From Macrostomum lignano (Eukaryota), in contig NIVC01001484.1 in the NCBI GenBank assembly GCA_002269645.1, forward strand, positions 279,134-343,133: a stretch of DNA of 64,000 nucleotides, written 5' to 3'. The notes beneath the pieces were generated by a model that worked only from the letters and a program-made list of their open reading frames with translations, was not told the DNA's origin and ran no database searches. This document shows positions 3,444 to 18,635 of the stretch, piece after piece. The translations under genes were made by a program, and so were the position numbers. How positions within the stretch are numbered: position 1 is the first letter of the stretch; the number at the start of each line of letters is the position of its first letter.

Positions 3444-6400
3444 ATGTCAAGCCAGCTTGATAAAAGTTCAGTTGCATTGGTTGCCAAGTGCAAACCTGGA
3501 TTATGGAGCAGGTAAATAAATTATAAATTATTTTTTTCAAATTAGTTTTAATTGTCGTGTATTGCTCTTAGGTTAGAAGTAAGATGTCCTTTGATTCTCA
3601 GACTGGGCTATCATCATCCTCTTAAATCCTCAGCTGCTTTGCAAACCTCCCATATCCTCAGTTGCTATGCCAGCCTCCCAGATCCTCAGTTGCTGTGCCA
3701 GCCTCCCAAATCCTCAGTTGCTGGGCCAGCCTCCCAGAGTGTCAGTTGCTGGGCCAGCCTCCCAGATCCTCAGTTGCTGGGCCAGCCTCCCAGATTATCA
3801 GTTGCTGGGCCAGCCTCCCAGATCCTCAGTTGCTGGGCCAGCCTCCCAGAGTGTCAGTTGCTGGGCCAGCCTCCCAAATCCTCAGTTGCTGGGCCAGCCT
3901 CCCAGAGTGTCAGTTGCTGGGCCAGCCTCCCAGATCCTCAGTTGCTGGGCCAGCCTCCCAGATCCCCAGTTGCTGGGCCAGCCTCCCAGAGTGTCAGTTG
4001 CTGGGCCAGCCTCCCAGATCCTCAGTTGCTGGGCCAGCCTCCCAGATCCTCAGTTGCTGGGCCAGCCTCCCAGATCCTCAGTTGCTTGGCCAGCCTCCCA
4101 GATCATCAGTTGCTGGGCCAGCCTCCCAGATCCTCAGTTGCTGAGCCAACCTCCCAGATCTTCAGTTGCTGGGCCAGCCTCCCAGATCCTCAGTTGCTGA
4201 GCCAACCTCCCAGATCCTCAGTTGCTGGCCCAGCCTCCCAGATCCTCAGTTGCTGGGCCAGCCTCCCAGATCCTCAGTTGCTGGGCCAGCCTCCCAGAGT
4301 GTCAGTTGCTGGGCCAGCCTCCCAAATCCTCAGTTGCTGGGCCAGCCTCCCAGAGTGTCAGTTGCTGGGCCAGCCTCCCAGATCCTCAGTTGCTGGGCCA
4401 GCCTCCCAGATCCCCAGTTGCTGGGCCAGCCTCCCAGAGTGTCAGTTGCTGGGCCAGCCTCCCAGATCCTCAGTTGCTGGGCCAGCCTCCCAGATCCTCA
4501 GTTGCTGGGCCAGCCTCCCAGATCCTCAGTTGCTTGGCCAGCCTCCCAGATCATCAGTTGCTGGGCCAGCCTCCCAGATCCTCAGTTGCTGAGCCAACCT
4601 CCCAGATCTTCAGTTGCTGGGCCAGCCTCCCAGATCCTCAGTTGCTGAGCCAACCTCCCAGATCCTCAGTTGCTGGCCCAGCCTCCCAGATCCTCAGTTG
4701 CTGGGCCAGCCTCCCAGATCCTCAGTTGCTGGGCCATCGCCGATCTTCAAGTTTAGTTACTTATTTTTTCACATGTATTTTATAATTTTTACGAGGAAAC
4801 GGCAGGAGCAAGAGTAACTATACCTTAGTGTTGAGTGAAAAAATGCTTCGTCATCTGATTAGTAGTGCTTCCATAATTCCATACTTATTTTCACCCTCAG
4901 ACAGGAACGCAAGCAGTGGATGGGGTCCCTGCTGATTGGGTCGGCCTGCCTGTACCTGAGTCGCACCATCATGCCGCTGTGCAACGTGCCAATTAGCACC
5001 GAGCTCAACTGGAGCAAAAGTACATCCGGTATGGTTCTTGGTGCATTCTTCTGGGGCTACACCTGTACTCAGTTTCTAGGCGGCTATTTAGCTGATCGAG
5101 TCGGCGGCGAGTTCGTTGTTACCATGGCAGCATTTGGCTGGGCCGCTGTCACCATGGTACATCCACTGTTGCCATGGCTATCGGATGATCCAAGCGTTCT
5201 ACTGTCGGCTTTCCTATTGTGCCGCGTGCTCACTGGCGCCTGCCAGGGCTTTCACTATCCCGGCATGAGCAGCCTCATGGCTCATCGGGTGCAGCTCAAA
5301 GAGCGAGCCTACACCTGGAGCGTCGGCAGCTGTGGAGCGCATGTTGGGTGAGCTGCGTAAATATCAAGATATGTCACTTGTAATTAAAATTTTGAAAAAA
5401 GCAGAGCGTCTACTCTTTTTTCCAGTAGTTTGTCTGCGCAGTGTAACTAAAATTTACATCTGAAATTTTCTTTCCATTCTCCGGGTTTGCGGCCTCAGGA
5501 GTATACTCGTATTGGGGTTAAGAATGAACTACAAGCATTCAACTCGATGTGTTAAAAACTTTAACATGGTGTATGAGTATATCAGTCATTGTAGTGACAC
5601 CTCAGTCATTAGAGTCATTAAAGTGACACCTTAGTCATTAGAGTAGTGAAACCTCAGTCATTAGAGTAGTGACACCTCAGTCATTAGAGTAGTGACATCT
5701 CAGTCATTAGACTGACACCTTAGTCATTAGACTGACACATTAGTCATTAGAGTGACACCTCAGTCATTAGAGTGACACCTCAGTCATTAAAGTGACACCT
5801 CAGTCATTAGAGTGACACCTCAGTCGTTAGAGTAAAAGACTGACCCTTAGTCTTTAGAGTAGTGACACCTCAGTCATTAGAGTAGTGACACCTCAGTCAT
5901 TAGAGTAGTGACACCTCAGTCATTAGAGTAGTGACACCTCAGTCATTAGAGTAGTGACACCTCAGTCATTAGAGTAGTGACACCTCAGTCATTAGAGTAG
6001 TGACACCTCAGTCAGTAGAGTAGTGACACCTCAGTCATTAGAGTAGTGACACCTCAGTCATTAGAGTAGTGATATCTCAGTCATTAGAGTGACAACTCAG
6101 TCATTAGAGTGACACCTCAGTCATTAGAGTGACACCTCAGTCATTAAAGTGACACCTCAGTCATTAGAGTAAAAGACTGACCCCTTAGTCTTTAGAGTAG
6201 TGAAACCTCAGTCATTAGAGTAGTGACACCTCAGTCATTAGAGTAGTGACACCTCAGTCATTAGAGTAGTGACACCTCAGTCATTAGAGTAGTGACACCT
6301 CAGTCATTAGAGTAGTGGCACCTCAGTCAGTAGAGTAGTGACACCTCAGTCATTAGAGTAGTGACACCTCAGTCATTAGAGTAGTGATATCTCAGTCATT

Positions 6401-8396
6401 AGAGTAGTGACACCTCAGTCAGTAGAGTAGTGACACCTCAGTCATTAGAGTAGTGATATCTCAGTCATTAGAGTGACACCTCAGTCATTAGAGTAAAAGA
6501 CTGACCCCTAAGTCATTAGAGTAGTGACACCTCAGTCATTAGAGTAGTGACACCTCAGTCAGTAGAGTAGTGACACCTCAGTCATTAGAGTAGTGATATC
6601 TCAGTCATTAGAGTGACACCTCAGTCATTAGAGTAAAAGACTGACCCCTTAGTCTTTAGAGTAGTGACACCTCAGTCATTAGAGTAGTGACACCTCAGTC
6701 ATTAGAGTAGTGACACCTCAGTCATTAGAGTAGTGACACCTCAGTCATTAGAGTAGTGACACCTCAGTCATTAGAGTAGTGACACCTCAGTCATTAGAGT
6801 AGTGACACCTCAGTCATTAGAGTAGTGACACCTCAGTCATTAGAGTAGTGACACCTCAGTCATTAGAGTAGTGATATCTCAGTCATTAGACTGACCCCTT
6901 AGTCATTAGAGTGACACTTTAGTCATTAGAGTAACACCTCAGTCATTAGAGTGTCACCTCAGTAATTAGCATCAACCCTGCACCTGCCGCACTGCTCAGC
7001 ACGCTACTCTGCGGCAGCGTTGGCTCTCTCATAGTCGGCAGCTACGGATGGCGCGCCGCCTTCATAGTGATTGGTCTGTGCGGCCTCACCTGGGCGTTTG
7101 TTGTCAGATCTACTCTGCTCCGGCGTCGGCAGAGGGTGATCGACTACGCCGTCACCGCCGATCAGCCTGTCGGATCTTCGACCTCGGGCGGTCAGCAGGC
7201 TGCTGTCGCCTCCCCAATTGATCAGCACCAGCTGCTTCTAGAAGACACTATGCAGCAGAAAGAGAGAGAAGCTGACAAGTTAGCTAGAAAGTTGAGCACC
7301 GAGTCGAAAGCAGTTGCCGCTGCCGCCGCTGGCGAGCGCGAAGGTGTGCCCTGGGGCGCCGTGGTCAGGTCGCCAGCGTTCTGGTGAGTAAACTGAAAGC
7401 ATTTGTCAGTGTCAATCGAGGAGTTTCATGCCCTCAAAAGCAGTTTCATGACCTTCCAAGCAGTTCCATGACCTTCCAAGCAGTTTCATAACCCCAAAAG
7501 CAGTTTCATAACCCCACAAGCAGTTTCATAACCCCACAAGCAGTTTCATAACCCCACAAGCAGTTTCATAACCCCACAAGTAGTTTCATAACCCCACAAG
7601 CAGTTTCATAACCCCACAAGCAGTTTCATAACCTCACAAGTAAATTCAAGACCTCAAAAGCAGTTTAATGACCTCACAAGTGGTTTAATGACCTCACAAG
7701 TGGTTTCATGACCTCACAAGCAATTTTATGACCTCAGCAAGTTGTTTTTAAAGAATCTTAACAAATTTTTGCCTAATGTAAAACTTAATTGAATGCTCAC
7801 AAAATGCCACCCCACCCCCGCATCGCAGGGCTATGATCGTTGGTCACTTCGCCCACGCCAATTCGTTCTTTATCCTGCTCAGCTGGATTCCCACCTATTT
7901 TCACGACAACTTCCCCGACGCCCGAGCCTGGGTATTCAACGTCGTACCCTGGATGGTGACCATTCCCGCGTCGCTGGGGTCCGGACTGCTGGCGGATTGG
8001 TTGCTAAGGAAACGATTGAGCGTCACCACTGTTCGCAAGCTGCTGGAAGGCACCAGCCTGTTGCTAACCGCCCTGTTCCTCTACCTGCTGTGCCACACCC
8101 ACTCCTACGCCCAGTCTCTGGCCTGCATGGCGTTGGCAATTTGCGCCTGCGGCTTTCACAATTCCGGAATTCTGGTGAATCCGCACGACCTCCTGCCGGC
8201 GCACGGCGGCGCCCTGTTCGGCGTTATGAACATCTTCGGCGCCGTGCCAGGCTTTGTAGGCGTCTACATGGTCGGGCACATCCTGGAGACCACTAAGAGC
8301 TGGCCGGCTGTGTTTCTCAACACGGCCGCAATCTGCGTTGTTGGCGCCGTTGTTTATCTGGCGTTCGGCTCGGGCAAACGGATTCGGTTGCGGTAG
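3444..8396 (+). CDS. SLC17A9: Vesicular nucleotide transporter SLC17A9/VNUT (MFS anion:cation symporter), about 488 aa, 4 exons
   Basis: join(3444..3511,4901..5347,7000..7383,7829..8396) = 1467 nt, GT-AG introns, phases consistent. WSRQERKQWMGSLLIG, FFWGYTCTQFLGGYLADRVGGE, LLSWIPTYFHDNFP and FHNSGILVNPHDL match SLC17A9 motifs recalled from the human protein. Confidence 0.93.
3640..4735. repeat. 28-bp minisatellite (ctgggccagcctcccagatcctcagttg), SLC17A9 intron 1
   Basis: About 39 near-identical units with an internal 448-bp higher-order duplication. Confidence 0.97.
5590..6965. repeat. 20/23-bp minisatellite (agtagtgacacctcagtcattag), SLC17A9 intron 2
   Basis: Dozens of units, ending about 35 nt before the exon 3 acceptor. 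Confidence 0.97.
7430..7740. repeat. 20-bp minisatellite (aagcagtttcataaccccac), SLC17A9 intron 3
   Basis: About 15 units with degenerate edges. Confidence 0.95.
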
Positions 8397-9859: not shown

Positions 9860-10400
9860 CTCTTTTCAACTGGCCGAACCAGCCTTACAACCCTTAAACC
9901 GAAATACCTTTTAACTGTCCGAAACACCTTTTAACTGTCCGAGACAACCCTTAAACTGTCAGAGACAGCCCTTTAACTGTCCGAAACACCTTTAAACTGC
10001 CTGAAACACCCTTAAACTGTCAGAGACAACCCTTTAACTGTCCGAAACACCTTTTAACTGCCCGAAACACCCTAAACTGTCAGAGACAACCCTTTAACTG
10101 TCCAAAACACCTTCAAACTGTCCGAAACACCTTTTAACTGCCCGAAACACCCTTAAACTGTCAGAGACAACCCTTAAACTGTCAGAGACAACCCTTTAAC
10201 TGTCCGAGACAACCCTTTAACTGTCCAAAACACTTTTAAACTGTCAGAGACAACCCTTTAACTGTCCGAGAAAACCCTTTAAACTGTCCGAAACACATTT
10301 AAACTGCCCGAAACACCTTTAAACTGTCAGAGACAAGCCTCAAAGCTGTTGGAAACACCCTTAAACTGTCCGAGATCTGAGACACAAACTGCCTGAACCA
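9860..10400. repeat. About 20-bp minisatellite (ttaaactgtccgaaacacc / cagagacaaccc variants) just downstream of the DAP3 stop
   Basis: About 25 units visible. Confidence 0.93.
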
Positions 10401-10458: not shown

Positions 10459-13173
10459 TCACCACTCGCCAGCAATGCGCAAAAGTTCGCCAGCATTGCC
10501 ATCGGACAGGAATGCCAGTTCAGCCCGCCCAGCATCCGTGGCAGCTGCTTCGCTGGTTAGCCAGCCGGACTCCGTGTACCAGTTGAGCATATTGCTCATC
10601 TCGGCCGGTCCGTACGGCTCCACGTACACGGGCACGAATGGGTCCAGATAGGCGAAGCCTTCATCTCCCAGCAGCTTGCGCGGCATCCATTCGCGCAGTC
10701 TGTCAAACAGGGCGCCCTGCGGCGACACGGACATCACGGCGGCTCCGTTGTTCCAGTCCGAGTCCAGCAGCTGCTTGAATGCGTCCAGCAGGGTGAGCTG
10801 CTTGGCTGTGATGTCCGCCCGCCATGGCGGCTCCTCGCCTTGTCTGCAGGTGCGGGACGGTGGGAAATACATGCAGTTGCTACCTTTACCGCTCACGGCT
10901 CACCCGTAATACCCTCTCTGTTCACCCATAATACCCTCCGCTCACCCATTAATACCCTCTCCACTCACCCATAATACCCTCTCCATCTCCACTCAGCCAT
11001 AATACCCTCTCCATCTACACTCACCCATATTACCCTCTCCGCTCACACCCTCTATTCACCCATAATACCCCTGCTCACCCATAATACCCTCTTCACTCAC
11101 CCATAATCCCCTCCGCTCATCTATAACCTTCTCCGCTCACCCATAATCCTCTCTGCTCATCCATAATACCCTCCGCTCATCCATAATCCCCTCCGCTCAC
11201 CCATAATCCCCTCCGCTCATCCATAATTCCCTCCACTCACCCATAATCCCCTCCGCTCATCCATAATTCCCTCCGCTCACCCATAATCCCCTCCGCTCAT
11301 CCATAATTCCCTCCGCTCACCCATAATCCCCTCCGCTCATCCATAATCCCCTCCGCTCACCCATAATCCCCTCCGCTCATCTATAATCCCCTCCGCTCAT
11401 ACATAATCCCCTCCGCTCATACATAATCCTCTCCGCTCACCCATAATACCCTCCGCTTATCCATAATACCCTCCGCTCACCCATAATCTACTCTGCTCAC
11501 CCACAAGACAGGGACTGCCAGGGCAGCTGTACACTCTACATGAGCGTGTGCATGCCTGCTCAGGGGTCAGGTTGACAACGCCCTCCAGAGAGCTAACTAA
11601 CAGAATCTAGTTCAACCCAGGCAAACTTATAAGCAGCTCAACTCACAGCGGAGTCCGTCGAATAGCGTCATTCTTAATACCGGACCGGTGCCACCAGAGG
11701 CAGTTGGCCACCTCGAAGCACACCAGAGTAGGCATAGGCAAGCTGCCCAGCTTGATCTCGTCAATCAGAAACTGCACAGCCGCGCAGCTGTACCTTGGCC
11801 TGGCCAGAGCGTAGTCGATAACCTCCTTCCAGCTGGAGCCGGCAGGCGTGGACTCCTTAGCGTTCCAGCTCAGCTCTTTGGTGACTCGAAGGCCGGGCAA
11901 TATTTCCTGATTCATTGCGTAGAAATGACGCAACCAAATGCAGCCGTAGCCAGCCGTGTCGAACATGCCAGGCCTGTGGGCGCTCTCGTGCAGTTCGCGA
12001 CTGTGGCGCATCCACAGGTGCGCATTGTGCACGGTGACTAGCAGCCAGCCCCGCCTGCGGCAAGCAGAGGCCACGTGACCCATCTTGAGTAGGGGGCAAT
12101 TTTTTGAAAGCGGTGTTTAGTTTCCATGGTGATATTACTGAAGCGTCACACGTGCACTTTTGAGTGAGGGTTTCAGAGGACATTTTGTACTTTTATGTGG
12201 GACTTGAAAATCTGAATCGTCGTCCAAGGAATTGATTATGAACAGCGATTGAAATGACAATTAACTATCAAGGACTACCATTAGAGACTCATAGGAGATT
12301 GGCAAGGACAACCATGAGGGACTCGTATGTGATTGTCAAGGACTACCATGAGATCCTCATTGGAGATTGTCAAGGACAGGACTACCATGAGATACTCATT
12401 GGAGATTGTCAAGGACTACCATGAGATCCTCATTGGAGATTGCCAAGGACTACCATGAGATCCTCATTGGAGATTGCCAAGGACTACCATGAGATCCTCA
12501 TTGGAGATTGCCAAGGACTACCATGAGATCCTCATTGGAGATTGCCAAGGACTACCATGAGATCCTCATTGGAGATTGCCAAGGACTACCATGAGATCCT
12601 CATTGGAGATTGTCAAGGACTACCATGAGGGACTCGTATGTGATTGTCAAGGACTACCATGAGGGACTCGTATGTGATTGTCAAGGACTACCATGAGATC
12701 CTCATTGGAGATTGTCAAGGACAATTTAAGATAGCCAATGCGCTGAGTTTCCAGCTGCCCACCTGCAACGACTTGCCGCTGCCCCGTCGGCCGTAGAGCA
12801 CAAACCGAAGGCAGGGCCGCCCGTCGCCAGCGTGTTCGGCCAGCCGCTCGCCAATCTCCAACGCCGGGCGTCGAACCATCAGCGCTCGCTGGCCGAGCGT
12901 GTCGAACAGGCGCACCAGCTCGGGCCGGCAGAAATGCCTGGTGACGGCCTGCCAGTCGGCCTCCTCCGGTCTGTACAGCAGGCCAACGTGTCGATCTAGC
13001 GAGTGCCGGTCAGGCGCAGATTCGTCTGTCAGTAGCGCGGCGCTGGCGCCTCCGCGCCGATTGACGCACGCGCCAAAAGGCGAAAGCTGGCGCCGCCGAA
13101 GCAGCCAGTTAGCAATGGAGCGGGACAGCAGCAGAAAGGGGAAATGGGATTGATCATGTGATTCTGAACCGGT
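10459..13173 (-). CDS. DAP3: Mitochondrial ribosomal protein S29 / DAP3 (P-loop), 3 exons; start codon not present in the first exon
   Basis: complement(join(10459..10843,11647..12083,12763..13173)). RFVLYGRRGSGKS (P-loop), WLLVTVHNAHLW, ANCLW, LLGDEGFAYLDPFVPVYV and ELAFLSDGN match DAP3. The first exon is open from its acceptor (ttttccccag|ACC GGT...) with no in-frame ATG. Confidence 0.9.
10900..11500. repeat. 20-bp minisatellite (ctccgctcacccataatccc), DAP3 intron 2
   Basis: About 28 units. Confidence 0.96.
12280..12722. repeat. 34-bp minisatellite (caaggactaccatgagatcctcattggagattgc), DAP3 intron 1
   Basis: About 12 units. Confidence 0.96.
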
Positions 13174-13289
13174 CTGGGGAAAATAGACTCGTCTTATTAG
13201 TACATTGCTTGTCCACCAATTAGACTCGGGCGATGCTGATCTACCAAGATTAGACCTTAAGGGGATGCAGACCTACCTGATTTAATCCC

Positions 13290-13935
13290 AAAGCTACCCA
13301 ATCAGAATCCCTTAACCTACCCAATTAGAATCCCTTAACCTACCCAATTAGAATCCCTTAACCTACCCAATTAGAATCCCTTAACCTACCCAATTAGAAT
13401 CCCCAACCTACCCAATTAGAATCCCTTAACCTACCTATTTAGAATCCTTCAATCTACCCAATTAGAATCCGCAACCCACCCAATTAGAATCCCCAACCTA
13501 CCCAAATTAAAATCCCCAACCTACCCAATTAGAATCCCAAAGCTACCCAATTAGAATCCCCAACCTACCCAATTAGAATCCCCAACCTACCCTATTAGAA
13601 TCCCCAACCTACCCAAATTAAAATCCCCAACCTACCCAATTAGAATCCCAAAGCTACCCAATTAGAATCCCCAACCTACCCAATTAGAATCCCCAACCTA
13701 CCCTATTAGAATCCCCAACCTACCCAATTAGAATGCCCAACCTACCCGATCAGAATCCCCAAGCTACCCGATTAGAATCCTCCAACCTACCCAATAAGAA
13801 TCCCAAAGCTACCCAATCAGAATCTCCAACCTAACCAATTAGAATCCCCAACCTACCCAACTAGAATCCCCAACCTACCCTATTAGAATCCCCAACCTAC
13901 CCGATCAGAATCCCCAAGCTACCCGATTAGAATCT
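13290..13935. repeat. 22-23 bp minisatellite (acctacccaattagaatcccca) upstream of the first DAP3 exon
   Basis: About 28 units. Confidence 0.95.
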
Positions 13936-14659
13936 GCAAGCATAAAAGAGGCATAGAAAAGAATTATAATATGAACAATAAATAAACGCCAACTAAAATC
14001 CACGTTTATATAAAATTCCAAACTGCAGTTACAAACTCGAAATTTCTGTTGCGCCAAGTTAAAGCCAACAAAACAATTTAAACAAGTTTTTTTTGCAGAC
14101 CAGGGTATCAAGTTGAATTTAAACACAGCAAACTTCAGTCTGCTTGCACCAATTATTTACCTGCAGAACCCCACATTGGAACTCTAAGGTCGGAAATTTA
14201 TATTATTTTTACAAACGCAAATATTTTTATTAATCTCAGCAACTGTTTAACAATTCCCCCTTATCCCAATAAAAAGTTACAAACAATAAAAATTGAACAC
14301 AATCGGAACAATTATATATAATATTGTTAGGATGGACAGTAATGAAACAAAGTATAAATAAGCTTCTCAGCGAATGGCAAATGAAGGAGCTAGCATTGGC
14401 TAGAATGTCTCAATAGTAGCATGCGAGTAGCATTTAGCACAAAAAACGCTACAATACTTTGTACAACTTTTAATCAAATTCTCACTGACTTAACTTGTGC
14501 GCGGAGAACAGGCAAGGTTGTATAATGCAAAATTATTCTTGCAGCGATATACAACAGTTGAACACTTAATGGACGCCAGAAAGTAATTTAAACTATGCTT
14601 ATTGAGCTACTCATCCCATAGCGATCCCATAGCGATATATATATATTAGGATTACTACA

Positions 14660-15270
14660 ATAATAGTTGATGCTATGGGATCAGGATTGATGCTTTGGGA
14701 TCAGGATTGATGCTTTGGGATCAGGATTGATGCTTTGGGATCAGGATTGATGCTTTGGGATCAGGATCGATGCTATGGGATCAGGATTGATGCTTTGGGA
14801 TCAGGATCGATGCTATGGGATCAGGATTGATGCTTTGGGATCAGGATTGATGCTATGGGATCAGGATTGATGCTATGGGATTAGGATTGATGCTATGGGA
14901 TCAGGATCGATGCTATGGGATTAGGATTGATGCTATGGGATCAGATCGATGCCATGGGATCAGGATTGATGCTATGGGATCAGGATTAATGCTATGGGAT
15001 CAGGATTGATGCTATGGGATCAGGATCGATGCCATGGGATTAGGATTGATGCTATGGGATCAGGATCGATGCTATGGGATCAGGATTGATGCTATGGGAT
15101 CAGAATTTATTCTTCTTTGGGATCAGCATTGATGCTTTGGGATCAGCATTGATTCTGTGGGAACAGCATTGATTCTGTGAGATCAGTATTGATTCTGTGG
15201 GATCAGTATTGATTCTGTGGGATCAGTATTGATTCTGTGGGATCAAGATTGATGGTATGGGATCAAAATT
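14660..15270. repeat. 20-bp minisatellite (gggatcaggattgatgctat) downstream of the stop at 15384
   Basis: About 30 units; two short inverted copies of the unit core at 14612-14636. Confidence 0.96.
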
Positions 15271-15383: not shown

Positions 15384-18300
15384 TCAGGATCTTCTAGTTT
15401 TCGAGTTTGTTGTCGTCGAAGAGGGCGGCGGATTCGTTGCCGGGGCACCGTAGCCCGCAACGCCGAGAAAGCTGCCATCGTCGGCTGCAGCAGACGATTC
15501 AGTTGCTGCTTTGGCCTGATTTTGCTGCTGCTGCTGTTTCTGTTGCTGTTGCAGCTGTTGCAGACTCTGCTGTTGCATCATCTGGCGTTGCAGATTTCGT
15601 TGCACATCGCCCAGACTGTTGGCTACAAGGCGAACAATGCCGCCTAATAGGGAGCTGACCTGCGGCTTTACAACAGCAACCTGCGCAGTGGATGGTCAAT
15701 GCGTTGCAATTTTAACTACCGATATGTTTTGAAACTCATGTGATCAAGGGCGATTCCTAATGATCAATAGCGATTCCTAATGATCAAGAGCGATTCCTAA
15801 TGATCAAGGGCGATTCCTAATGAGCAAGGGCGATTCCTAATGATCAAGGGCGATTCCTAATGAGCAAGGGCGATTCCTAATGATCAAGGGCGATTCCTAA
15901 TGATCAATGGCGATTCCTAATGATCAAGAGCGATTCCTAATGATCAAGGGCGATTCCTAATGATCAAGGGCGATTACTAATTATTAAGGACGAGTTATAA
16001 TGATCAATGGCGATTTCTAATTATTTAATGGGTGTTTGTACTTAATGATGAAACTGTCTGATATTTTTTCACCTGACGCTGCTGACCAGTCGATTGCGTA
16101 GCAGTCGTTGACGTGCGACCTCCAACTCCGTCTCCGCCGCTGCTGCTACTGGCGACCACGCGGTCGATGAAGGAACTGCTGACTGGCACAATTGGCTGGG
16201 CGATGCGCTGCTCGACGGCGCCCTGCTCATCGGCGTAGAGGAAACTCTCGGCCCGTTGCACCTGCGACACGTGGTTTTTAACTATAGCAATGTTCTTGCA
16301 GACCAACATAATCAATTCAGTATGAGAGTTCAGGCTAGAAATCTACCAGAATCTCATCTGATCTACCAGAATCTCATCTAATCTACCAGAATCTCATCTG
16401 ATCTACCAGAATCTCTTCTGCTCTACCAGATTGAGACTAGAAATACACCAGAATCTCATGTAATCTACCAGAATCTCGTCTGATCGATCAGAATCTCATC
16501 TGATCTATGAGATTTCAGACTAGAAATCTACCAGAATCTCATCTGATCTATGGGATTTCAGGCTAGAAATCTACCAGAATCTCATCTGATCTATGAGATT
16601 TCAGGCTAGAAATCTACCAGAATCCCATCTGATCTACCAGAATCTCATCTAATCTACCAGAATCTCATCTGATCTACCAGAATCTCTTCTGCTCTACCAG
16701 ATTGAGACTAGAAATCTACCAGAATCTCGTCAGTCGTCTGATCGACCAGAATCTCATCTGATCTATCAGAATCTCATCTGATCTACCAGAATCTCATCTA
16801 ATCTACCAGAATCTCATCTGATCTACCAGAATCTCTTCTGCTCTACCAGATTGAGACTAGAAATCTACCAGAATCTCGTCAGTCGTCTGATCGACCAGAA
16901 TCTCATCTGATCTATCAGAATCTCATCTAATCTACCAGAATCTCAACTAATCTATCAGAATCTCATCTAATCTACCAAAATCTTATCTGATCTACCAGAA
17001 TCTCTTGCTCTACCAAATTCATACTAGAAATCTATTAGAATCTCATCTGATCTACCAGATTCAGACTAGAAATCTACCAGAACCTCATTTAATCTACCAA
17101 AATCTCATCTAATCTGCCAGAACCTCATCTAATCTACCAAAATCTCATCTAATCTGCCAGAACCTCATCTAATCTACCAAAATCTCATCTAATCTACCAG
17201 AATCTCATCTAATCTACCAAAATCTCATCTGCTCTACCAGATTTCAGACTAGAAATCTACCAAAACCTCATCTAATCTACCAGAATCTCATCTAATCTAC
17301 CAGAACCTCATCTAATCTACCAAAATCGCATCTGCTCTACCAGATTTCAGACTAGAAATCTACCAAAACCTCATCTAATCTACCAGAATCTCATCTAATC
17401 TACCAGAACCTCATCTAATCTACCAAAATCGCATCTGCTCTACCAGATTTCAGACTAGAAATCTACCAGAACCTCATCTAATCTACCAGAATCTCATCTA
17501 ATCTACCAGAACCTCATCTAATCTACCAAAATCTCATCTGCTCTACCAGATTTCAGACTAGAAATCTAATCCAGAAGCAGAACAGCGGTGCCTTCAGCTG
17601 TACCTTCTCTCCTTCGCGCAGCTCAAGTTGCCTTCGCAGAACTTCGCCAGTCTTCGAGTTGGACCCAGCCGAGCTCAAACGATCAGCAGCTGCGGCCGCC
17701 TCCTTGGCCGCCTGTCGCTGACGCATGCGACTCATCTGACGTTCAACGAAAGCGTCGAAAGAATGAGCAGCTCGTCGACTATCGGAGTTGCTGCCAGCGC
17801 CAGCACCGCCGACGCCGCCACTCTCTTGACGATGCCGACTGTGATGGCCGTGATGATTACCGCGACGCTCGTGTCGATGTCTGCGATGACTGCTTGACGA
17901 GTCTTTATGAGCATTCCGGTCGTGGTGACGATGGCGTTTGCGGTGCTTGTGCTCTGAGCTTTTATGCTCCTGAGCACTTCGGTGCCGTCTAACCTTGTCC
18001 TCGTGTCGACCTTTGGACTCGGATTTTCTATGCTGCTTCTGTTGCTGCTGCTGAAGAACGAACTCTCTGGCGTCCGTGGCTTCGCCTAGCTCGTCAAACT
18101 GTGGCAGACAGTCAGCAGCGGCTGTTAGAGTCCTACTCGACTGCAAAACTTCCTCGCCTGCCAAGCCTCCTCTGTCTTCATCAAAGCCGGCAGTCTCCGA
18201 TTCGAGATTATTAGGCGGAGTCGAAGGCAGCAGCATAGCGCTGTCATAGTACGCGCCAGCAAAGCTATTGCGATCAGTTTCGTCTGGCCCGTAGCCAGAG

Positions 18301-18635
18301 TTGGTTTCTAAATCCATGGAAACATTGCCCGGGTCGTCCGCTTCCACTGCGGGATCTAAATCTGGGTCCGGATCCTCGGAAGCAGTAGTTGCAGAAGACT
18401 CCGCGGCATTATTAATCGAGTTAGAATTGTTGCTAGTCTTCTTTTGATAATATTCGCTCAATGAGACGCGCTTCTTCTGCGACTCCTTGTGCTTTAGCTG
18501 CATCATCAGGCGCTTCTTCGGCGGCATGGCGCCATCTGGCTCGGCTGGTGGCTGCGGCTGAGGCGCCGTTGTTGCCGCGTCGGAGACCAGATCCTCTTCG
18601 CCAACCATGGAGAGCCAGCGCTTCTTTGCCGCCAT
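15384..18635 (-). CDS. Uncharacterised low-complexity nuclear protein (basic/His-rich and poly-Q tracts; KKRWL and KKRVSLSEY motifs reminiscent of SETD5/KMT2E/UpSET C-terminal regions), about 516 aa or longer
   Basis: complement(join(15384..15680,16073..16294,17604..18635)); all junctions phase 0 if the AAG acceptor at 16295 is used. The ORF extends upstream to an acceptor at 18677, so further 5' exons are possible. The family assignment is from motif memory only. Confidence 0.7.
15740..16020. repeat. 20-bp minisatellite (tgatcaagggcgattcctaa), intron of the 15.4-18.6 kb gene
   Basis: About 14 units filling most of a 392-bp intron. Confidence 0.96.
16330..17565. repeat. 20-bp-based minisatellite (ctaccagaatctcatctaat) with longer variant units, intron of the 15.4-18.6 kb gene
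   Basis: Fills almost the whole 1.3-kb intron. Confidence 0.96.

What the first reader, a model, noticed from the sequence alone, without database searches (positions are those of the whole stretch)
12763..13190. DAP3 has no start codon: first exon opens at a phase-0 acceptor, as expected for a spliced-leader-donated AUG
Seen: the 411-nt exon is open in the DAP3 frame from its acceptor (ttttccccag|ACC GGT TCA...) and encodes an Arg/Leu/Ser-rich presequence-like stretch (LLLSRSIANWLLRRRQLSPF). Its only nearby ATG (about 13154-56) is out of frame and ends in a stop. Upstream I see only a minisatellite and the 3' end of another gene. Established: flatworm spliced leaders end in AUG, which can act as the initiator Met. 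Inference: the conserved mitoribosomal protein depends on trans-splicing for its start codon. The organism assignment is itself inferred.
Basis: partly seen in the sequence, partly recalled or inferred. Interest (0 to 1): 0.7.

Follow-up and report, generated by a model that had tools for sequence, protein, structure and literature searches.

The report
One-base frameshift hides DAP3's start codon
This flatworm (Macrostomum lignano) mitoribosomal gene seems to lack a start codon only because this copy is missing one A that sister copies keep, and with that A its own ATG opens a normal protein, so a start codon donated by trans-splicing is possible here but neither needed nor shown.

Summary
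Exon 1 (13173..12763, minus strand) of Macrostomum lignano mS29/DAP3 is open from a good acceptor (ttttccccag|ACC). It has no in-frame ATG before Met99. The nearby ATG (13157-13155) is out of frame and stops after 42 codons.

The window is the end of contig NIVC01001484.1 of the Mlig_3_7 assembly (PacBio plus Pilon). Two sister loci in that assembly carry one extra A, between window 13138 and 13137. With it, that same ATG is in frame. In L002 it opens a complete 405-aa mS29 (MINPVSPFLLLSRSIANWLLRRRQ...) with a typical mitochondrial presequence, and a spliced-leader AUG at the acceptor would be out of frame there.

So "no start codon" describes this one assembled copy, not the gene. The missing A is either an uncorrected assembly deletion or a copy-specific frameshift; no independent reads could be reached to decide.

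The M. lignano spliced leader does end in ATG, and it would be in frame in this copy. I put that rescue at about 0.2. No evidence shows this gene is trans-spliced. Initiation from the leader AUG in flatworms has been known since 2006. Interest is low.

The parts
12763..13173 (-). Exon 1 of mS29/DAP3 (411 nt). It holds the presequence region, the conserved N-terminal block and the P-loop GRRGSGKS (12792-12769).
   Evidence: Donor is TTGCAG|gtgggc.
13174..13183 (-). Acceptor-like site ttttccccag, immediately upstream of exon 1. It could be a spliced-leader or a cis acceptor; its use is unverified.
   Evidence: Kept as ttttcgccag in L002 and L003. Only a partial match to the M. lignano trans-acceptor motif [T/C]TNCAG.
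13155..13157 (-). The gene's own ATG. It is out of frame (+1) in this copy and in frame in sister locus L002.
13029..13157 (-). The 42-codon out-of-frame ORF opened by that ATG in this copy (MINPISPFCCCPAP...RY, then TGA).
13137..13138 (-). Site of the one-base difference. The window reads CCCC|TTTC; L002 and L003 read CCCCATTTC. It is the only indel in 1233 nt of exons between the window and L002.
12877..12879 (-). First in-frame ATG (Met99). It lies inside the conserved LMVRRPALE motif and is an internal residue in orthologues.
11647..12083 (-). Exon 2 (437 nt), between ctactcaag|ATGGGT and CCGCT|gtgagt.
   Evidence: The spliced product is 100% identical to P0001.
10459..10843 (-). Exon 3, with the TGA stop at 10461-10459.
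13284..13934 (.). Minisatellite of 22-nt units, about 29 copies, upstream of exon 1.
15384..18635 (-). Upstream same-strand gene: a 505-aa low-complexity His/Arg-rich protein (MAAKKRW...). Its stop lies 2.2 kb from the acceptor, or about 960 nt once the two minisatellites are subtracted.

Best explanation
The initiator of this gene is its own ATG at 13157-13155, 16 nt downstream of the acceptor-like site. In sister locus L002 that ATG opens a complete 405-aa mS29. Its N-terminus, MINPVSPFLLLSRSIANWLLRRRQLSPF..., looks like an ordinary mitochondrial presequence.

The window copy lacks one A between 13138 and 13137 (CCCC|TTTC instead of CCCCATTTC). That shifts the ATG out of frame and, as a side effect, brings the frame that starts at the acceptor into register with DAP3. 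So the missing start codon is a one-base frameshift in this assembled copy. It is not a design in which the spliced leader supplies the AUG.

I think the missing A is most likely an uncorrected deletion in the PacBio/Pilon assembly (about 0.45). Otherwise it is a recent deletion specific to this homeologue in a neopolyploid genome, and the L002-type copy supplies normal protein.

Shown here: the indel, the in-frame ATG and the full ORF in L002. Inferred: which allele state is true for this locus, and which copy is translated.
For: 1. L002 and L003 both carry the extra A; from the same ATG, L002 gives a 151-aa genomic ORF and a complete 405-aa spliced ORF ending at the same TGA.
2; a leader AUG joined at the acceptor stops after 22 codons in L002, so at least that copy must use its own ATG.
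3; across all three exons (1233 nt) the window and L002 differ by 11 substitutions and exactly one indel, this A.
4; the cis-ATG N-terminus has no acidic residue before position 45, like the frog, beetle and third orthologue N-termini (first acidic residue at 22-33). The leader-AUG N-terminus, MTGSESHDQSH..., has Glu5 and Asp8.
5; pN/pS between the copies is 0.26 (4 nonsynonymous, 5 synonymous changes); coding divergence is 0.76% against 2.4% in unique non-coding sequence. The window copy has therefore not been drifting as a long-dead gene, which fits an artefact or a very recent change.
6. The assembly is prone to this kind of error. L003 has 16 private 1-nt indels against 3 private substitutions, all but one of those indels within about 2.8 kb upstream of exon 1 and one inside it. 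The assembly's authors report that 18.4% of de novo transcripts have a shorter ORF on Mlig_3_7 than in the transcript (PMC5730564 Suppl. Fig. 4c).
7; the window is the same record as L001, so no second assembly vouches for the missing A.
Against: - In the 6.7 kb compared, the window contig looks clean. It has 7 private 1-nt indels against 230 private substitutions. L002 has only 2 private 1-nt indels, both in repeats. A real homeologue difference is therefore at least as likely as an error.
- The site is a lone A between a C-run and a T-run, not a classic homopolymer-length error.
- The polarity of the indel is unknown because no outgroup was available. L002/L003 could have gained the A.
- As assembled, two of the three loci (window and L003) have the acceptor frame in register and the cis ATG out of register.
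- Neither public annotation extends to the ATG, even in L002, so no transcript evidence was seen for the cis ATG either.
Confidence: 0.62

Rival explanations
1. The deletion is real or ancestral, the pre-mRNA is trans-spliced at 13174|13173, and the 3'-terminal AUG of the M. lignano leader (CGGTCTCTTACTGCGAAGACTCAATTTATTGCATG) starts translation. The product would be MTGSESHDQSHFPFLLLSRS.... The leader AUG thus rescues, or originally served, an ORF with no usable cis AUG.
For: - The leader ends in ATG.
- The acceptor has a strong pyrimidine tract plus CAG and is kept in the sister loci.
- The leader AUG is in frame and open through the whole 411-codon product in this copy.
- No cis ATG exon lies upstream.
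- 45.3% of conserved M. lignano genes are trans-spliced.
- The same-strand upstream gene lies about 960 nt away after repeat adjustment, just under the 1-kb operon threshold.
- The copy's coding sequence is under purifying selection.
- The window contig shows few signs of indel error.
- The mechanism is established in Schistosoma mansoni (Cheng et al. 2006, as cited in PMC9851317).
Against: - No read, EST or annotation shows trans-splicing of this gene. The NCBI models, built by a pipeline that cuts at spliced-leader read peaks, start at 13122, not 13173.
- L002 has its own in-frame ATG and an out-of-frame leader AUG, so the gene as such does not depend on the leader.
- The resulting N-terminus carries Glu5 and Asp8, unlike the orthologues compared.
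- Both substitutions in the 13173-13138 stretch are nonsynonymous in this frame: E to V and H to R.
- The frame coincidence has about a 1-in-4 chance after any 1-nt indel (my estimate).
Confidence: 0.2
2. The deletion is real and recent and nothing rescues it. This homeologue has just lost its start and is on its way to being lost in a redundant neopolyploid genome. The L002-type loci make the protein.
For: - M. lignano is a recent polyploid with duplicated loci.
- At least two further loci encode a near-identical protein.
- The 1-nt indel rate between homeologues in unique non-coding DNA is about 1.5 per kb. That is higher than the apparent error rate of good contigs.
Against: - The rest of the coding sequence shows constraint (pN/pS 0.26, 4 nonsynonymous changes), so the loss would have to be very recent.
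- This cannot be told apart from an assembly error without reads.
Confidence: 0.2
3. The leader is used, but at another acceptor and in other copies. L003 has A instead of T at the position equivalent to 13133. That turns TTTCTG|CTGCTG into TTTCAG|CTGCTG, a perfect match to the M. lignano trans-acceptor motif. A leader AUG joined there would give MLLSRSIANWLLRRR....
For: - The variant is seen. It is the only private L003 substitution outside a repeat in 6.7 kb.
- The two UniRef models from the older ML2 assembly both begin LLSRSIANW, at exactly the first codon after that AG (P0001, P0007).
- Orthologues begin MLLRR....
Against: - The window and L002 have T there, so no AG.
- L003 is an error-laden contig end, and as assembled it carries a 1-nt deletion 9 nt further on that breaks this frame.
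- The reason for the UniRef model start is unknown.
- The NCBI models start 9 nt further downstream.
Confidence: 0.08
4. Translation starts in some other way. Options are a cis-spliced upstream exon carrying an ATG, a near-cognate CUG (three in-frame CTG codons at 13134-13126), or Met99.
For: - One consensus donor (aagtca|GTGAGA) lies at 14485 in the conserved unique block.
- In-frame CTG codons are present.
Against: - No ATG is open in phase 0 to any consensus donor between 15384 and 13174.
- One GT[AG]AG site against about 4 expected by chance (my calculation).
- Met99 would remove the presequence and the conserved N-terminal block.
- The upstream out-of-frame AUG would intercept scanning ribosomes before the CUGs (inference).
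Confidence: 0.04

Closest known systems
[quoted passage not shown]
   Same: The M. lignano leader ends in AUG. In this assembled copy an acceptor sits in phase with an ORF that has no usable cis AUG.
   Different: Trans-splicing of this gene is not shown. Sister locus L002 has its own in-frame AUG and would put the leader AUG out of frame. In S. mansoni the leader AUG is in frame in 28% of trans-spliced transcripts, about chance level, so being in frame is weak evidence by itself.
Mitochondrial small-subunit ribosomal protein mS29 / DAP3 (Pfam PF10236)
   Same: Full-length domain match, P-loop GRRGSGKS, about 400 aa, and 30-37% identity to animal mS29.
   Different: Nothing unusual apart from the unresolved first 15-50 nt of the coding region in this copy.
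[quoted passage not shown] 2017, PMC5730564)
   Same: A single-base gap in a Canu/Pilon assembly of a repeat-rich polyploid genome, next to a minisatellite. The resulting gene model is 5'-partial in GenBank.
   Different: For this locus an error is not proven. The local error signal is strong in L003 and weak in the window contig.
Homeologue divergence and gene loss in the neopolyploid M. lignano (PMC10733133, abstract only)
   Same: There are two locus types, differing by 2.4% in unique non-coding and 0.76% in coding sequence. One of them is frame-shifted at its start.
   Different: The rest of the coding sequence is still under constraint (pN/pS 0.26).

Membership tests
mS29/DAP3 (PF10236) | Pfam DAP3 domain above the gathering score over its full length | tested here: met
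   154.1 bits against a cut-off of 23.1, residues 98-405 matching profile positions 1-310 of 311.
mS29/DAP3 (PF10236) | P-loop NTP-binding motif GxxGxGK[ST] | tested here: met
   GRRGSGKS at residues 128-135 of the exon 1 translation.
mS29/DAP3 (PF10236) | Best relatives are animal mS29 proteins | tested here: met
   100% identity to M. lignano mS29; the next hits are frog and insect mS29 at 30-37%.
mS29/DAP3 (PF10236) | N-terminal mitochondrial presequence | tested here: inconclusive
   The sequence is presequence-like from LLLSRSIANWLLRRR onward. The true first residues depend on which start is used. Only simple composition measures were available, not a trained predictor.
Leader-AUG-initiated flatworm mRNA (Cheng et al. 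2006 class) | The species' spliced leader ends in AUG | tested here: met
   Taken from the literature, not from the window: CGGTCTCTTACTGCGAAGACTCAATTTATTGCATG (PMC8629364). No SL RNA gene lies in the window.
Leader-AUG-initiated flatworm mRNA (Cheng et al. 2006 class) | The mRNA is trans-spliced at the acceptor in question | not testable with these tools
   No reads or transcripts could be reached (supplements). Public models start at 13131 or 13122, not 13173.
Leader-AUG-initiated flatworm mRNA (Cheng et al. 2006 class) | The leader AUG is in frame with the conserved ORF, with no intervening stop | tested here: inconclusive
   Met in the window/L001 copy and in L003 as assembled. Not met in L002, where a stop follows after 22 codons.
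Leader-AUG-initiated flatworm mRNA (Cheng et al. 2006 class) | No cis AUG can open the ORF, and this holds across copies of the gene | tested here: not met
   True for the window copy. In L002 the cis ATG opens the complete 405-aa ORF.
M. lignano operon downstream gene (criteria of Ustyantsev & Berezikov 2021) | Same-strand upstream neighbour with a repeat-adjusted intergenic distance under 1 kb | tested here: met
   2211 nt minus 651 and 599 nt of tandem repeat leaves about 961 nt, which is borderline.
M. lignano operon downstream gene (criteria of Ustyantsev & Berezikov 2021) | The downstream gene is SL trans-spliced | not testable with these tools
   No read-level data were available.

The most novel reading that the evidence does not exclude
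In a recently polyploid flatworm, the two homeologues of an essential mitoribosomal gene would use different start codons. One copy (L002 type) uses its own AUG. The window copy lost that frame through a 1-nt deletion, and translation moved to the AUG donated by the spliced leader at an acceptor 16 nt upstream. This swaps the first 8 residues of the presequence for 14 others. It would be a natural example of the leader AUG buffering a frameshift at a start codon.
Probability: 0.2. Interest if true: 0.5.

Novelty: already known. Interest (0 to 1): 0.2.

Why it matters
If the leader-AUG reading were true for this copy, it would add one more gene to a class described in flatworms in 2006. Its modest twist would be a start-codon handover between homeologues.

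The practical value of the check is a caution. In the Mlig_3_7 assembly, an ATG-less first exon that sits in phase with an acceptor cannot be read as dependence on the leader AUG without comparing the sister loci or the reads. One-base frame breaks are common in this assembly, and any 1-nt deletion downstream of this ATG would produce the same appearance.

Tried and rejected
- **Homology searches with exon 1 alone, and with the 151-aa L002 exon-1 ORF.** Neither gave a significant hit. Neither recovered P0001, although it shares more than 120 nearly identical residues, so a miss from the word-indexed search on short queries means little.
- **Exhaustive representative search.** P0001 represents its own cluster. 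No longer Macrostomum mS29 with an N-terminal Met exists in the collection, and the next relatives are at most 37% identical. No outgroup was available for polarity.
- **Exact-product look-ups for independent (Logan, ENA) contigs.** I tried the 42-aa out-of-frame ORF, the 66-aa exon-1 ORF and the 146-aa exon-2 ORF. None is on record.
- **Supplement and full-text searches for DAP3, Mlig014544 and Mlig006505.** I searched four M. lignano papers and the whole library and found nothing. Wasik et al. 2015 is not held under the id I tried, which I gave from memory.
- **SL RNA gene or leader sequence in the window.** None, allowing up to 3 mismatches. Rfam and tRNA scans of the window were empty.
- **Upstream cis exon with an ATG.** Rejected. 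Only four ATG..GT phase-0 paths exist, and all have non-consensus donors.
- **Window copy as a long-dead pseudogene.** Rejected. There are 4 nonsynonymous changes against roughly 10 expected (my estimate; Poisson p about 0.03).
Full report
**What is there.** All coordinates are on the minus strand. An exon of 411 nt runs from 13173 to 12763. It is bounded by ttttccccag|ACCGGT and TTGCAG|gtgggc. Two further exons follow: 12083-11647 and 10843-10459, with the TGA stop at 10461-10459. All have canonical splice sites. Together they give a 410-codon product that matches Pfam DAP3 end to end, at 154 bits against a 23.1 cut-off. It carries the P-loop GRRGSGKS.

**Which organism and record.** The product is 100% identical to Macrostomum lignano mS29 (UniRef A0A1I8FZM8; NCBI PAA67428.1, locus Mlig014544.g1, flagged 'partial'). 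The window is base-for-base identical over 14,664 nt to contig NIVC01001484.1 of assembly GCA_002269645.1, Mlig_3_7. From those coordinates it is the last 64 kb of that contig.

**Check of the observation.** Frame 0 is open from the acceptor. It contains no ATG until 12879-12877 (Met99). That Met sits inside the conserved LMVRRPALE motif and is an internal residue in orthologues. Frame 0 also has no GTG or TTG before 12915.
It is in frame +1 and ends after 42 codons.
- A second ATG at 13205-13203 lies upstream of the acceptor and reads ATG TAC TAA.
- Upstream of the exon are a 22-nt minisatellite (13284-13934), about 730 nt of unique sequence, a 20-nt minisatellite (14667-15265), and the stop of a same-strand 505-aa gene near 15384.
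- I found no ATG that stays open in phase 0 to a consensus donor anywhere between 15384 and 13174.

The description is therefore confirmed. As a pattern it is not rare. A phase-0 acceptor followed by about 15 stop-free codons is expected about one time in six (my estimate).

**The decisive comparison.** The same assembly holds two further DAP3 loci: L002 (NIVC01000650.1) and L003 (NIVC01003820.1). Both encode a protein that differs from the window's at four residues. Aligning the 5' ends shows that both carry one extra A, CCCCATTTC, where the window has CCCCTTTC, between 13138 and 13137.

- In L002 it opens a 151-aa genomic ORF and a complete spliced ORF of 405 aa. It starts MINPVSPFLLLSRSIANWLLRRRQLSPF... 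and ends at the same stop.
- This A is the only indel in 1233 nt of exon sequence between the window and L002.
- In L002 a leader AUG joined at the upstream acceptor would be out of frame and stop after 22 codons.
- So at least one copy of the gene has a conventional start and cannot use the leader AUG for this ORF.

The difference is that it is seen in sister loci, not in reads from this locus.

**Is the missing A real?** I could not settle this.

Evidence for an artefact:
- Mlig_3_7 is a Canu PacBio assembly polished with Pilon.
- Its authors report that 18.4% of de novo transcripts have a shorter ORF on the genome than in the transcript.
- L003, a contig end, carries 16 private 1-nt indels against 3 private substitutions. 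All but one of those indels lie within about 2.8 kb upstream of exon 1. The remaining one is a C missing from TCCCGC at the position equivalent to 13124, inside exon 1.

Evidence for a real difference:
- The window contig and L002 look clean here. L002 has 2 private 1-nt indels, both in repeats.
- The window has 7 private 1-nt indels against 230 private substitutions, a ratio typical of true divergence.
- In unique non-coding DNA the homeologues differ by 2.4%, with about 1.5 one-base indels per kb.

The rest of the coding sequence is under purifying selection: pN/pS is 0.26, and coding divergence is 0.76% against 2.4% non-coding. So this copy has not been a long-dead gene.

My rough odds for the window copy are as follows. 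They are an order-of-magnitude judgement, not a measurement.
- Assembly deletion: about 0.45.
- Recent real deletion without rescue: about 0.2-0.25.
- Real deletion, or ancestral state, with the leader AUG in use: about 0.2-0.25.

**The spliced-leader reading.** The M. lignano leader is CGGTCTCTTACTGCGAAGACTCAATTTATTGCATG, so it ends in ATG. About 30-39% of genes, and 45.3% of conserved genes, are trans-spliced.

Points in its favour:
- The site at 13183-13174 is a good acceptor and is kept in the sister loci as ttttcgccag.
- The repeat-adjusted distance to the upstream same-strand gene is about 960 nt, just inside the published operon criterion.
- Trans-splicing here is therefore plausible, and in this copy the leader AUG would be in frame.

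Points against:
- No evidence of any kind shows the gene is trans-spliced.
- The GenBank models come from a pipeline that cuts transcripts at spliced-leader read peaks. They begin at 13122 in all three loci.
- The predicted N-terminus MTGSESHDQSH... has acidic residues at positions 5 and 8. The cis-ATG N-terminus has none before position 45, like the three orthologues compared.
- Both substitutions between the copies in this stretch are nonsynonymous in the acceptor frame.
- Any 1-nt deletion downstream of the ATG produces the same picture of "ATG out, acceptor frame in". L003 shows this with a different and probably erroneous deletion.

**A lead I could not close.** L003 has A for T at the position equivalent to 13133. 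That creates TTTCAG|CTGCTG, a perfect match to the published trans-acceptor motif [T/C]TNCAG. The two UniRef models from the older ML2 assembly begin exactly at the following codon, LLSRSIANW. A leader AUG joined there would give MLLSRS..., which resembles orthologue N-termini (MLLRR...). The window and L002 have no AG at this site, and L003 is error-laden. I rate this at about 0.08.

**Comparison with what is known.** Use of the flatworm leader AUG as initiator was shown in Schistosoma mansoni in 2006. There the AUG is in frame in 28% of trans-spliced transcripts, and more than 40 cDNAs need it (cited in PMC9851317). Its conservation across flatworm leaders is noted in PMC12582326. Tools exist to find such ORFs genome-wide. 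Even if true for this copy, the finding would be another member of a known class.

The membership test fails on one defining point. The absence of a usable cis AUG does not hold across copies of the gene.

**Verdict.** The best explanation is a one-base frame break, either artefact or copy-specific, that hides a conventional start codon. Interest is low (0.2). The leader-AUG handover between homeologues remains the most novel reading not excluded, at a probability of about 0.2.

Noticed in passing
L003:3644 (equivalent to window 13133): A T-to-A difference makes TTTCAG|CTGCTG, a perfect trans-acceptor motif. The UniRef (ML2 assembly) mS29 models P0001 and P0007 begin exactly at the next codon (LLSRSIANW). 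A leader AUG joined there would read MLLSRS....
   Followed up: partly
window 13122 (L001:6001, L002:6001, L003:3654): The GenBank 'partial' CDS starts at RSIANW in all three loci. That position is not preceded by AG. It lies immediately after L003's private 1-nt deletion. Why all three models start there is unexplained.
   Followed up: partly
L003:1-3652 (terminal 3.6 kb of contig NIVC01003820.1): There are 16 private single-base indels against 3 private substitutions relative to the near-identical L002. This is the signature of unpolished PacBio sequence at a contig end.
   Followed up: yes
P0007 (UniRef A0A1I8G659), C-terminus: It ends GEWVTC instead of GEW-stop. An extra G in the ML2 assembly (GAGTGG-G-TGACCTGCTGA) would explain this. 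That would be another frame error in a DAP3 copy, but it is inferred and not checked against ML2 DNA.
   Followed up: no
window 13935-14666: This unique intergenic block between two minisatellites is 98.2% identical between homeologues, as conserved as the exons. It holds the only consensus donor (aagtca|GTGAGA, 14485) in the 2.2-kb spacer. It could hold the promoter or a non-coding 5' exon.
   Followed up: partly
window 10003-10373, 10899-11503, 12268-12722, 13284-13934, 14667-15265, 15741-16021, 16340-17568: Minisatellites with 20-34-nt units fill both DAP3 introns, the 3' flank and the intergenic spacers. Copy numbers differ between homeologues by whole units.
   Followed up: partly
window 15384-18635 (minus strand): The upstream same-strand gene encodes a 505-aa low-complexity protein rich in His, Arg and Ser (MAAKKRWLSMVGEEDL...HRRHRHERRGNHHGHHSRHRQ...) with no Pfam hit on record. 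With DAP3 it meets the distance criterion for an operon only after repeats are subtracted.
   Followed up: no
window about 4459-8396 (L001:10727-14664, plus strand of the window): A convergent neighbour downstream of DAP3 encodes an MFS_1 transporter of 488 aa. It is present in all three loci.
   Followed up: no
(tool behaviour): The word-indexed protein search did not return P0001 for two exon-1 queries (137 and 151 aa) that share more than 120 nearly identical residues with it. Negative results from that tool on short queries are therefore unreliable.
   Followed up: no
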